A stretch of DNA of 64,000 nucleotides from Octopus sinensis (Eukaryota). A model generated the notes under the pieces. It ran no database searches, was not told where the DNA came from, and worked only from the letters and a program-made list of their open reading frames with translations. The stretch is taken from positions 6,262,001 through 6,326,000 of the forward strand of contig NC_043022.1 in the NCBI RefSeq assembly GCF_006345805.1. Reading direction: 5' to 3'. The position numbers and the translations under genes were made by a program. This document shows positions 27,591 to 27,910 of the stretch, one piece after another (position 1 is the stretch's first letter; every line of letters starts with the position of its first letter).

Positions 27591-27910
27591 TTTCAAAGAA
27601 AAAGGTAATGTAAAAGGAGAAGAAAGGGGACTTTCTACACCCCCTTTTTTTGACCAGGCTCCCGTTGGCTTTTGTAGGGTTTTTTCCACCAGGAACCTTT
27701 CGAGACGTCTCCCCCTTTTGGGAGTTTTTCATTGTTTTAATAATCATTGTTTTAAAGTTTTTTACACGGATTTTTTAACAAACGAACAAAACCCTTTGTA
27801 ACCTTTCGTCCTGTCTTGTCCCTTTATGTAATCATGCGTGTCAGCCCTTGTGGCCAATAAAAAAGAATTGATTATTATTATTATTATTATTATTATTATC
27901 ATCATCATTA

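What the first reader, a model, noticed from the sequence alone, without database searches (positions are those of the whole stretch)
27805..27870. Tx1 LINE and Meta-like SINEs share a 3' tail with a covarying CUUGU stem-loop
Seen: the LINE end gtcctgtcttgtccctttatgt…tcagcccttgtggccaataaaaaagaa aligns with the long-tail SINE end gtccttgtttgtcccctct(a/g)tgtttagccccttgtgggtaataaagaaata. The short-tail SINEs, whose tails otherwise differ, keep the same hairpin loop with different but still pairing stems: LINE GCC-CTTGT-GGC; long-tail GCCC/GGGT (9822-9836, 58242-58256) and GCTC/GGGT (4836-4848); short-tail TGGC/GCCA (19817, 28348), AGGC/GCCT (18601, 45444), TGGT/ACCA (40985), TTTC/GGAA (44026), TGTC-CTTAT-GGCA (28102). 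A few copies have one broken pair (18358, 23216, 44242). Established: stringent LINEs such as eel UnaL2 recognise a 3' stem-loop shared with partner SINEs; such partnerships are mostly L2/CR1/RTE, and I know few for animal L1/Tx1. Inference: a Tx1-driven SINE system with a CUUGU recognition loop. These SINEs may correspond to already described octopus SINEs; I cannot check whether this partner has been reported.
Basis: partly seen in the sequence, partly recalled or inferred. Interest (0 to 1): 0.8.

Follow-up and report, generated by a model that had tools for sequence, protein, structure and literature searches.

The report
Octopus LINE and SINEs share hairpin
A nearly full-length L1/Tx1-type retrotransposon in an octopus-like genome ends in a tiny 4-base-pair RNA hairpin that the many short SINE elements around it also carry, with compensating base changes, so this LINE group is probably what copies the SINEs; it is a new example of a well-known kind of partnership.

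Summary
The LINE at 23347-27870 ends in GCC-CTTGT-GGC.

On 34 tails from the window and from relatives elsewhere, 88.6% of stem cells pair, against 66% in shuffles. All four pairs show compensatory changes (covariation 0.56 against 0.18; 0/500 shuffles).

Tail sharing between the LINE and the long-tail SINE is weak in the window (3/5000 shuffles). It is decisive in Argonauta hians, where the orthologous LINE 3'UTR and SINE tail align over about 65 nt (0/5000).

The short-tail SINEs match the window LINE only in the hairpin, the GAAA end motif, the 12-15 nt spacing and the (ATT)n context. Their unique tail matches 3'UTRs of sister LINE families (about 42% amino-acid identity; a cuttlefish and an unidentified genome).

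The LINE is L1-like. Its relatives insert site-specifically and in tandem, which fits Tx1, but no reference phylogeny could be run. "Meta-like" could not be verified.

A recognition role for the loop is inference, and the loop varies in LINE relatives.

Prior art: a Tx1-SINEU partnership in crocodilians and stringent L1-clade pairs in plants. Verdict: a new member of a known kind.

The parts
23347..27870 (+). Near full-length L1/Tx1-like LINE copy. It is embedded in (ATT/ATC)n on both sides and is G+C-rich (53% against about 38% background).
23347..24157 (+). LINE 5' region. It is low-complexity CAN-rich sequence with a 145-aa ORF (23531-23968) that has no Pfam hit. There is no long ORF1 like the 546-720 aa ORF1 of the relatives.
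24158..27590 (+). ORF2 with an apurinic-type endonuclease (PF03372), reverse transcriptase (PF00078) and zf-RVT (PF13966). Two frameshifts break it, near 24340-24373 and near 24813-24825, so this copy is dead.
   Evidence: Pfam hits. Frames come from the tblastn segments 24158-, 24367-24819 and 24819-27587. Best PDB relative is human L1 ORF2p, E 3e-43, against R2 at 5e-23.
27591..27870 (+). LINE 3'UTR. The last 60 nt or so (27809-27870) is the tail shared with the long-tail SINEs.
27843..27855 (+). LINE hairpin aGCC-CTTGT-GGCc. It has 3 Watson-Crick pairs plus an A.C at the fourth position, and lies 15 nt from the end of the unique sequence.
   Evidence: present in the minimum-free-energy fold.
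27871..27909 (+). (ATT)n/(ATC)n run joining the LINE end to the next SINE.
53610..54344 (-). Old 5'-truncated copy of the same LINE lineage (P0001 aa 765-912, 47-57% identity). It ends ttttGCC-ctgat-GGCaaatatatgaaatc(ATC/ATT)n. The hairpin is at 53631-53643.
9810..10041 (-). Long-tail SINE, full length, with a 16-bp target-site duplication GGTATTTCGTCTGCTG. It is inserted in another SINE. The GCCC-CTTGT-GGGT hairpin is at 9823-9835.
58230..58452 (-). Long-tail SINE with target-site duplication AAGTACC, inserted in another SINE. The hairpin is at 58243-58255.
4734..4860 (+). Long-tail SINE, 5'-truncated. The GCTC-CTTGT-GGGT hairpin is at 4836-4848.
16915..17128 (-). Short-tail A SINE. The hairpin region is at 16929-16941 (TGGC-CTTGT-GTGT, with a GT insertion). 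There is (ATT)n at the 5' side.
18343..18566 (-). Short-tail B SINE. The hairpin is at 18357-18369 (AGGC/CCCT, one broken pair).
18587..18800 (-). Short-tail B SINE. The hairpin is at 18601-18613 (AGGC/GCCT).
19802..19935 (-). Short-tail A SINE (partial). The hairpin is at 19816-19828 (TGGC/GCCA).
23012..23242 (+). Short-tail B SINE just upstream of the LINE. The hairpin is at 23216-23228 (AGCC/GACT, one broken pair).
27912..28128 (+). Short-tail A SINE. The hairpin is at 28102-28114 (TGTC-CTTAT-GGCA). Its stem is of the LINE type.
28157..28374 (+). Short-tail A SINE. The hairpin is at 28348-28360 (TGGC/GCCA).
40971..41140 (-). Short-tail A SINE. The hairpin is at 40985-40997 (TGGT/ACCA). An (ATT)n tail of about 500 bp follows it.
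44012..44218 (-). Short-tail A SINE. The hairpin is at 44026-44038 (TTTC/GGAA).
44228..44441 (-). Short-tail B SINE. The hairpin is at 44242-44254 (AGAC/GCCT, one broken pair).
45430..45580 (-). Short-tail B SINE (5'-truncated). The hairpin is at 45444-45456, and the stem extends to 8 bp in this copy.
52217..52400 (-). Short-tail A SINE, decayed. It has loop TTTGT at 52235-52239 and a broken 3' arm.
58452..58537 (+). Short-tail A SINE, 3' part of a copy split by the long-tail insertion. The hairpin is at 58511-58523 (TGGC/GCTG).

Best explanation
The window comes from an octopod-type genome. It holds a dead but nearly full-length LINE of an L1/Tx1-like, target-specific clade, together with about 20 copies of A-box/B-box-bearing SINEs.

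The LINE lineage (the window copy, an older window fragment, a metagenome contig and two Argonauta copies) and all three SINE tail types end in the same module:
- a 4-bp G+C-rich stem closing a 5-nt loop (consensus CUUGU);
- 7-9 A/U-rich bases;
- GAAA(Y)(C);
- often (AUU)n.
The hairpin always lies 12-15 nt from the end of the unique sequence.

Most likely mechanism. The LINE ORF2 protein recognises this 3' module on its own transcript to start target-primed reverse transcription. SINE transcripts that acquired the module, presumably by template switching, are copied in trans. This is the stringent type of LINE/SINE partnership.

The long-tail SINE is the direct tail partner of this LINE lineage. 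The short-tail SINEs carry a tail variant whose closest matches are 3'UTRs of sister families of the same LINE clade. They are therefore probably driven by a related family that is not in the window.

Integration of the LINE and of the short-tail SINEs is biased to sense-oriented (ATT)n. That bias produces head-to-tail SINE/LINE chains.

Shown: tail homology, stem covariation, fixed spacing, L1-like ORF2, site-specific relatives, and the (ATT)n context. Inferred: protein recognition of the hairpin, trans-mobilisation, template-switch origin, and Tx1 clade membership.
For: Tail sharing.
- The Argonauta LINE 3'UTR fragment against the Argonauta SINE tail scores 57, against a shuffle maximum of 32 (0/5000).
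- The window LINE against the long-tail SINE gives 3/5000, and L005 against the long-tail SINE gives 5/5000.

Structure.
- 34 tails: 88.6% of cells paired against 66.1%; 28 doubly changed cells against 12.6; covariation 0.561 against 0.180 (0/500); slid controls 0.04-0.21; all 4 pairs show compensatory changes.
- LINE-only set: 90.9% paired, 0/500. Window-only set: 85.3%, 0/500.
- RNAalifold predicts exactly this 4-bp hairpin as the only consensus structure.
- Fourteen cells are G.U or U.G wobbles. These would be mismatches on the antisense strand, so the sense RNA is the folded molecule.

Conservation. The loop window ranks 3rd of 210 for conservation in the SINE alignment.

Short-tail tails. 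They match sister LINE 3'UTR ends: L006 against tail B scores 43 against a maximum of 25, and L003 and L008 against tail A give 0/3000.

LINE identity. Pfam finds APE, RT and zf-RVT. Human L1 ORF2p is the best solved relative.

Target specificity in the clade. All solo insertions of the P0149 family sit at the same position of one repeated sequence. A tRNA-like SINE with the same tail type sits at that same site in L013.

(ATT)n context. The LINE and 8 of 9 full-length short-tail SINEs have sense (ATT/ATC)n directly at the 5' junction, although (ATT)n of 4 units or more covers only 2% of the window.
Against: - The hairpin is thermodynamically weak. Fold energies of the tails are not better than shuffles (z from -2.0 to +0.9).
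- The window LINE itself has only 3 Watson-Crick pairs.
- The loop differs in several LINE relatives (CTCGT, CATGT, TATAT, CTGAT, AGGT), so no single loop sequence is required across the clade.
- The unique part of the short-tail tails is not significantly similar to the window LINE tail.
- No sister-type LINE was found in octopod DNA available here.
- The copies are related by descent. Subfamily structure inflates shuffle-based statistics, and the number of independent compensatory events is perhaps 8-10, not 28.
- Long-tail SINEs do not share the (ATT)n context of the LINE.
- I chose the sequences by anchoring on the loop, and left out two SINE copies without a hairpin and one LINE copy with a 4-nt loop.
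- No functional data exist.
Confidence: 0.65

Rival explanations
1. The window LINE lineage mobilises only the long-tail SINE. The abundant short-tail SINEs are driven by a different family of the same clade, the GGC/GCC-stem lineage represented by the P0007/P0017/P0006 families and the cuttlefish LINE. This refines the main explanation and does not contradict it.
For: Short tails A and B match the C-rich tract, A-run and hairpin of L003, L006, L008 and L011 at 0-3 of 3000 shuffles. Against the window LINE tail they score at chance. The stem type GGC/GCC is shared with those LINEs, not with the window LINE, which has GCC/GGC.
Against: - No LINE of that lineage was seen in octopod sequence: not in the window and not in Argonauta L001.
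- About 200 kb of the genome that holds those LINEs contains no octopus-type SINE.
- Short-tail A ends GAAAYC(ATT)n, exactly like the octopod LINE lineage (L005 and the old window copy).
- Two short-tail copies (28106, 44030) carry LINE-type stems.
Confidence: 0.4
2. The SINEs that end in (ATT)n are mobilised by a LINE of another clade that recognises the microsatellite rather than the hairpin. An example is an RTE element such as RTE-2_OV, whose 3'UTR is mostly microsatellite. On this view the hairpin is a relic.
For: RTE-2_OV is expressed, is intact, and has a microsatellite right after its ORF (PMC9115989). RTE and Dong-R4 are abundant and recently active in O. vulgaris (PMC13282606). Many SINE copies end in long (ATT)n.
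Against: - The repeat unit of RTE-2_OV is not stated.
- The other LINE in the window ends in (AAT)n, the opposite strand sense, and its 3'UTR does not match the SINE tails.
- A relic would not keep pairing through compensatory changes, nor keep the loop among the best conserved SINE segments.
- Long-tail and several tail-A copies have no (ATT)n at all.
Confidence: 0.1
3. The hairpin is a real, selected RNA structure but is not the reverse-transcriptase recognition site. It could serve RNA stability, 3'-end formation, ORF1p or host-factor binding, or positioning of the priming site.
For: - It lies a fixed 12-15 nt from the 3' end, next to an AAUAAA-like stretch in the LINEs.
- It is too weak to be a stable stand-alone structure.
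- The loop sequence varies among LINE families.
Against: Pol III-transcribed SINEs have no use for a Pol II polyadenylation context, yet they keep the module. By analogy with UnaL2 and ZfL2, the shared-tail stem-loops tested so far are ORF2p binding sites (PMC1636434, PMC4176376).
Confidence: 0.15
4. There is no selection on structure. The pattern reflects common descent of a short GC-rich near-palindrome plus chance.
For: The stem is only 4 bp. GGCC and GCC/GGC motifs are self-complementary by nature. The sequences are related, and shuffles overstate significance for related sequences.
Against: - Slid-partner controls keep relatedness and drop to 27-46% paired and covariation 0.04-0.21.
- Changes occur at all four pairs, with six pair types at the outer pair.
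- Single copies carry 2-4 coordinated changes (TGGT/ACCA, TTTC/GGAA).
- The hairpin is kept between LINE families with only about 42% amino-acid identity and otherwise divergent 3'UTRs.
Confidence: 0.07

Closest known systems
Eel UnaL2 / UnaSINE1 and zebrafish ZfL2 (L2 clade, stringent type)
   Same: The LINE and SINE share a 3' tail. A conserved stem-loop lies near the 3' end and is followed by a short repeat tail. The loop is conserved while the stem varies with compensation. In that system the stem-loop is bound by ORF2p and is needed for mobilisation (PMC1636434, PMC4176376).
   Different: - It belongs to a different LINE clade (L2, not L1/Tx1).
- The UnaL2 stem is longer and stable, whereas here it is 4 bp with a 5-nt loop.
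- The tail repeat is TGTAA there and (ATT)n or none here.
- No functional test exists here.
Maize/sorghum LINE1-1_ZM with ZmSINE, and Chlamydomonas L1-1_CR with SINEX-3_CR (stringent L1-clade pairs)
   Same: These are L1-superfamily LINEs with a conserved 3'-end hairpin, compensatory stem changes, a conserved loop, and the tail shared with SINEs (PMC3472496, PMC3747384).
   Different: They are from plants and algae and end in poly(A). The loop (UCU) and flank (CGAG) motifs differ. They are not target-specific.
Crocodilian Tx1-Mar LINEs and SINEU
   Same: A Tx1-clade LINE is proposed to mobilise SINEs, and the LINE and SINE share a target preference (PMC4494074). This parallels the shared (ATT)n context here, and the shared target site of LINE and SINE in locus L013.
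   Different: That partnership was inferred from target and 5' heads, not from a shared 3' hairpin. The SINE heads derive from snRNA, and the hosts are vertebrates.
Kibi, Koshi and crocodilian Tx1 families that insert into microsatellites
   Same: They are L1-like, target-specific LINEs found inside a particular microsatellite: (TC)n, (TTC)n, (TTCC)n (PMC4494074, citing Kojima and Fujiwara 2004).
   Different: The microsatellite here is (ATT)n. Only one full-length copy and two further 3' ends were seen. Microhomology priming on earlier (ATT)n tails could give the same picture without endonuclease specificity.
Proposed 3'UTR stem-loop of human L1 and Alu
   Same: It is a claimed conserved 3' stem-loop shared by an L1 and its SINE (PMC5135761).
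   Different: Human L1 is the relaxed, poly(A)-dependent type, and no sequence homology links the tails.

Membership tests
Stringent-type LINE/SINE partnership (shared 3' tail) | The SINE 3' end is homologous to the 3' end of a LINE in the same genome. | tested here: met
   Argonauta LINE against SINE: 0/5000 shuffles over about 65 nt. Window LINE against long-tail SINE: 3/5000. For the short-tail SINEs this is met only with sister LINE families from other genomes.
Stringent-type LINE/SINE partnership (shared 3' tail) | A conserved stem-loop in the shared tail, with compensatory stem changes. | tested here: met
   The stem is 4 bp, and all four pairs show double changes. The structure is thermodynamically weak.
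Stringent-type LINE/SINE partnership (shared 3' tail) | The tail is required for retrotransposition and is bound by the LINE protein. | not testable with these tools
   This needs a retrotransposition or binding assay.
Tx1 clade of the L1 group | An L1-type ORF2 with an N-terminal apurinic-type endonuclease, a reverse transcriptase and a C-terminal zinc-binding region. | tested here: met
   PF03372, PF00078 and PF13966 are present. Human L1 ORF2p is the best PDB match, E 3e-43, against R2 at 5e-23.
Tx1 clade of the L1 group | The RT domain groups with Tx1 reference elements in a phylogeny (RTclass1-type test). | not testable with these tools
   No named Tx1 reference sequences were reachable, and no source name among the hits says Tx1. 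Indirect support: in O. vulgaris the only L1-like class among recently active LINEs is 'L1-Tx1' (PMC13282606).
Tx1 clade of the L1 group | Target-sequence-specific insertion. | tested here: met
   - Relatives at about 41% amino-acid identity (P0149 family): five solo or array-leading 5' junctions (L011, L013, L014, L016, L019) fall at ...gttaagttaactcca^gcctaacac... of one repeated sequence, and the copies form tandem arrays.
- Window lineage: (ATT/ATC)n lies on both sides of the one full copy and at the 3' end of two more. This is suggestive only, with n small.
MetaSINE superfamily | The 66-bp Meta central domain. | not testable with these tools
   No Meta consensus was available, because the paper's figures and supplements are not held. 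Published surveys label the main octopus SINEs tRNA-Core and tRNA-Deu (PMC8967140).
CORE-SINE superfamily | The CORE central domain (MIR-like). | tested here: inconclusive
There is local resemblance only (..TTTC.TCATC..GGGG.ATAA..AGTACC).
tRNA-derived SINE | [quoted passage not shown] | tested here: inconclusive
   ARAGORN and Rfam found no tRNA in the window or in a good copy. Box-like segments (GCAGAAT, GAGTTCAAAT) are among the most conserved SINE columns.

The most novel reading that the evidence does not exclude
A cephalopod-wide clade of target-specific Tx1-like LINEs uses a minimal 4-bp/5-nt 3' hairpin, at a fixed distance from the RNA end, as its template-recognition signal. Octopus SINEs captured variants of that module. 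The octopus-specific SINE expansion (about 10% of the genome) was therefore driven by these LINEs and not by the RTE element that has received the attention. Their (ATT)n-directed integration would also have seeded long microsatellites and head-to-tail SINE chains.
Probability: 0.35. Interest if true: 0.65.

Novelty: new member of a known kind. Interest (0 to 1): 0.5.

Why it matters
SINEs are the largest repeat class in Octopus genomes and have been linked to genome reshuffling and neural transcription. None of the octopus repeat papers I could read names the LINE that copies them (PMC13282606, PMC8967140, PMC9115989, PMC12988792, PMC4824008).

A shared, covarying tail hairpin gives a concrete candidate, an L1/Tx1-like clade, and a concrete element to mutate.

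It would also add an animal example to the few stringent-type partnerships known in the L1 superfamily, and so bear on whether stringent recognition is ancestral there.

The concept itself (a shared 3' stem-loop, with the SINE parasitising the LINE) is textbook. Curated repeat libraries that I could not consult may already note the tail relationship.

Tried and rejected
- Metagenome scans for more octopod DNA. The protein-pattern scan found 165 pattern matches, none confirmed. An exact scan with the SINE core found nothing.
- ARAGORN and Rfam on the window and on one SINE copy gave no tRNA and no family.
- Supplements of the MetaSINE, SINEBase and Ohshima 2012 papers are not held.
- A BLAST-short of the tails against the window at E=50 gave only noise and no non-SINE match of note.
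- Fold energies of 10 tails were not better than shuffles. I therefore make no claim of a stable structure; the claim rests on covariation.
- Extended outer helices, such as TTCT/AGAA in Argonauta and AAATT/AATTT in tail A, appeared in single folds. RNAalifold did not support them, so I dropped them.
- The other LINE in the window (41307-43519) was rejected as a partner. Its tail is (AAT)n and its 3'UTR scores at chance against the SINE tails.
- Cluster names gave no clade label.
- The top lists are dominated by one non-octopod genome, so the chance of recovering an octopod sister LINE looked low.
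Full report
**What is in the window**

The 64-kb window is A+T-rich (about 38% G+C) apart from one 4.5-kb G+C-rich block. 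A BLAST of two SINE copies against the window finds about 20 copies or fragments of one SINE family on both strands.

The G+C-rich block is a LINE at 23347-27870 (+).
- It holds an apurinic-type endonuclease (PF03372), a reverse transcriptase (PF00078) and a zf-RVT zinc-binding region (PF13966).
- tblastn with relatives shows that ORF2 starts at 24158 and changes frame twice, near 24340-24373 and near 24813-24825. The copy is therefore dead but nearly full length.
- The closest solved structure is human L1 ORF2p (E 3e-43 over the tower/RT/wrist region), far ahead of R2 proteins (5e-23).
- A second, older 3' fragment of the same lineage lies at 54344-53610 (-).
- A third, unrelated RT fragment lies at 41307-43519 (+).

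**Check of the observation**

The quoted LINE end is there. I extracted every SINE tail and every LINE tail I could reach and anchored them on the loop.

CTTGT as a word is not enriched in the window, so the signal lies in the context and not in the pentamer.

In the window-only set (2 LINE and 15 SINE tails):
- 85.3% of stem cells form standard pairs, against 60.0% when 3' arms are shuffled among sequences;
- covariation is 0.627 against 0.210 (0/500);
- controls with the partner slid by 1-3 columns give 0.05-0.21.

The position outside the fourth pair pairs in only 4 of 34 tails, so the helix is exactly 4 bp with a 5-nt loop.

In an alignment of the 13 short-tail copies the mean majority frequency per column is 0.80, but the loop shows 63/65 matches. 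It ranks 3rd of 210 five-column windows, level with the box-like head motifs and the AAGTACCAG core.

**Relatives from elsewhere**

A protein search with ORF2 gave three groups of relatives:
- close relatives at 67-80% identity (an NCBI octopod-like contig, two JGI contigs, and Argonauta hians);
- a large group at about 40-47% identity from ENA assemblies;
- a cuttlefish protein at 38% identity.

I fetched their DNA.

1. L005 (79% identity) ends ...gtttccgGGCC-cttgt-GGCCaataaaagaaatc followed by more than 30 ATT units.

2. The Argonauta locus L001 holds the LINE and a 5'-truncated copy that keeps the whole 3'UTR. That copy ends ...TTCTGTGTCGGCC-CTTGT-GGCTAATAAAGAAATCTAT.
   - L001 also holds six SINE copies with the same core as the window SINE. 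Their tails read ...TTCTGTGTTCGGCC-CTTGT-GGCTAATAGAGAAATCTAT.
   - LINE against SINE tail scores 57, against a maximum of 32 in 5000 shuffles, over about 65 nt.
   - In the window the same comparison is much weaker (25 against a mean of 13.6; 3/5000).
   - The tail sharing between the LINE and the long-tail SINE therefore holds in two octopod genera, and the two tails change together between genera.

3. The sister LINE families (L003/L004, L006, L008, L009, L011-L019) and the cuttlefish LINE (L010) have homologous 3'UTRs.
   - They end in a C-rich tract, an A/T run, a hairpin, a second hairpin and AATAAA.
   - Hairpin 1 reads (A/T/C)GGC-CTTGT-GCC(A/T/G). Loop variants are CTCGT, CATGT and TATAT.

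**Covariation on the full set**

On all 34 tails (33 distinct):
- 88.6% of cells pair, against 66.1% in shuffles;
- 28 cells have changes on both sides, against 12.6;
- there are 13 further pair types, against 8.2;
- covariation is 0.561 against 0.180 (0/500 for each of these);
- slid controls give 0.04-0.21.

Pair by pair, counting outward from the loop:
- pair 1 is C-G, with one U-A and one U.G;
- pair 2 flips between C-G (the octopod LINE lineage, Argonauta SINEs and long-tail SINEs) and G-C (sister LINEs and short-tail SINEs), with some U.G;
- pair 3 is G-C, with C-G in the long-tail SINE and U-A in one copy;
- pair 4 takes six pair types.

The 11 LINE tails alone give 90.9% paired and 0/500. 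RNAalifold, run blind on 15 long-type tails, returns this 4-bp hairpin and nothing else.

Fourteen cells are G.U or U.G. These would be A.C mismatches on the other strand, so the sense transcript is the structured molecule.

Caveats:
- the sequences are related, so the number of independent double changes is nearer 8-10 than 28;
- I chose the register by the loop;
- the hairpin is weak, and fold energies of whole tails do not beat shuffles.

**Which LINE goes with which SINE**

The unique parts of short-tail A (...CCCCTCCCCCAAAATTGC-TGGCCTTGTGCCA-AAATTTGAAAYC) and short-tail B (...AAATYCC-AGGCCTTGTGCCT-ATAGTAGAAAGG) behave as follows.
- They match the sister LINE 3'UTR ends. L006 against B scores 43 against a maximum of 25. 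L003 and L008 against A give 0/3000.
- They do not match the window LINE tail (56 to 414 of 3000 shuffles score as high).
- They do not match the unrelated LINE at 41307-43519.

No sister-type LINE was found in the octopod DNA I could reach. The genome that holds the sister LINEs has no octopus-type SINE in about 200 kb.

Other features tie all three SINE tail types to the octopod LINE lineage.
- The hairpin always lies 12-15 nt from the end of the unique sequence.
- It is followed by an A/U-rich spacer and GAAA(Y)(C).
- Short-tail A ends GAAAYC(ATT)n, as do L005 and the old window LINE.
- Two short-tail copies (28106 and 44030) carry LINE-type stems.

I conclude that the long-tail SINE is the direct tail partner of this LINE lineage. 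The short-tail SINEs depend on the same clade, through a family not present in the window.

**Target behaviour**

Solo insertions of the P0149 LINE family all lie at one position of one repeated sequence (...gttaagttaactcca^gcctaacac...). Repeated hits produce LINE-LINE tandem arrays.

In L013, a 140-nt SINE with a tRNA-like head, a hairpin-1/hairpin-2 tail and the end ...AAGTTAAT sits at that same site directly after a LINE. A second copy elsewhere has an ordinary 14-bp duplication. This is the kind of target specificity that defines the Tx1 group (PMC4494074, PMC3747384).

In the window:
- the LINE and 8 of 9 full-length short-tail SINEs have sense-oriented (ATT/ATC)n right at the 5' junction, although (ATT)n of 4 or more units covers only 2% of the window;
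- elements form head-to-tail chains joined by (ATT)n;
- arrays reach about 500 bp;
- long-tail SINEs instead have ordinary duplications of 7 and 16 bp.

Two mechanisms would give this picture, and the data do not separate them: endonuclease preference for (ATT)n, as in Kibi and Koshi, or annealing of an (AUU)n RNA end to earlier tails.

**Mechanism proposed**

By analogy with UnaL2 and ZfL2 (PMC1636434, PMC4176376) and with stringent L1-clade LINEs of plants (PMC3472496), the ORF2 protein would recognise the 3' module and start target-primed reverse transcription 12-15 nt downstream. The module consists of the hairpin, the spacer and GAAA. SINE RNAs carrying it would be copied in trans.

The shown and inferred steps are separated under the best explanation. 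The loop is strongly conserved in octopod tails but differs among LINE families. Shape plus a few bases (the last loop U is invariant in 34 tails) is therefore a safer statement than 'a CUUGU recognition loop'.

**Comparison with what is known, and novelty**

- Shared 3' stem-loops are the classic basis of LINE/SINE partnerships.
- L1-superfamily examples are few: maize/sorghum and Chlamydomonas.
- A Tx1-SINE partnership has been proposed in crocodilians from shared targets, not tails (PMC4494074).
- None of the octopus repeat papers I read names a partner for octopus SINEs.
- Bivalve SINE work finds L2, CR1 and other partners but does not mention Tx1.
- I could not consult Repbase or Dfam, where the relationship may already be noted.

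I rate it a new member of a known kind, of moderate interest. Tx1 membership rests on architecture, the L1-like best match, the target specificity of relatives, and the fact that L1-Tx1 is the only L1-like class reported as active in O. vulgaris. A reference phylogeny could not be run. The 'Meta-like' label is unverified.

Noticed in passing
window 19971-20508: A 17-bp minisatellite (TGCCCAGCTAAGCATTT, 32 copies, 92% matches). The unit is a piece of the SINE head (AAATGCTTAGC...). It lies directly next to the SINE copy at 19802-19935, so it is a SINE-derived tandem array.
   Followed up: partly
window 41307-43519 (+), and 43700-43890: An unrelated 5'-truncated LINE (RT only, about 24% amino-acid identity to the Tx1-like ORF2). 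It begins in (AAT)n and ends in (AAT)n. A further C-terminal fragment of the same kind lies 200 bp downstream. Its 3'UTR does not resemble the SINE tails.
   Followed up: partly
window 33553-33765, 44557-44699, 48205-48356: Three short arrays of a 61-68-bp unit (ACGTAAAAAGCACCATCC..GTGGCC..GCCAGC..). This is another dispersed repeat family of unknown kind.
   Followed up: no
window 22626-23009, 40468-40966, 45104-45431: (ATT)n arrays of 330-500 bp, always in the sense orientation of the adjacent SINE. SINE and LINE tails seem to seed long microsatellites.
   Followed up: partly
window 36001-40000: Strong G over C skew (0.35) in this 4-kb bin. Paired short matches about 1320 bp apart (for example 37400/38720 and 37994/39311) suggest a tandem duplication. 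A (GA)n run lies at 39527-39696.
   Followed up: no
L011-L019 (ENA ERZ21867824), e.g. L016 7747 and 14178: The P0149 LINE family inserts at one fixed position of a repeated sequence (...gttaagttaactcca^gcctaacactttggcagtcagactga...) and builds tandem LINE arrays with a period of 6.4-6.8 kb. The last 15 nt of the LINE equal the target sequence before the site.
   Followed up: yes
L013 14181-14320; L016 2613-2486 (-): A simple SINE of about 140 nt with a tRNA-like head. Its tail carries the CTTGT hairpin, a second hairpin (CAAAG/CTTTG) and the end AAGTTAAT. One copy sits at the LINE's own target site, and one sits elsewhere with a 14-bp duplication.
   Followed up: partly
L003 ~7150-7168, L006 ~14160-14176, L008 ~9999-10012, L010 ~12595-12609, L011 ~14140-14156: Sister LINE families carry a second hairpin between hairpin 1 and AATAAA. 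Its arms differ in sequence (UUGUAUA/UAUACAA, CCUGU/ACAGG, CUUUGUA/UACAAAG), which looks like a second covarying stem. RNAalifold did not capture it because the register differs.
   Followed up: partly
window 45437-45463 (-): In one short-tail B copy the stem extends to 8 perfect pairs (TTCTAGGC/GCCTAGAA). No other copy has this.
   Followed up: no
L001 12265-12268: The Argonauta LINE copy that encodes P0003 has AGCC-AGGT-GGCT. The stem is intact but the loop is a 4-nt AGGT instead of CTTGT, unlike the neighbouring 5'-truncated copy of the same family.
   Followed up: no
window 23347-24157: The LINE has only about 810 nt before ORF2. That stretch is mostly CAN-rich low-complexity sequence with no recognisable ORF1, whereas relatives have ORF1 of 546-720 aa, some with a weak zf-CCHC hit.
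   Followed up: no
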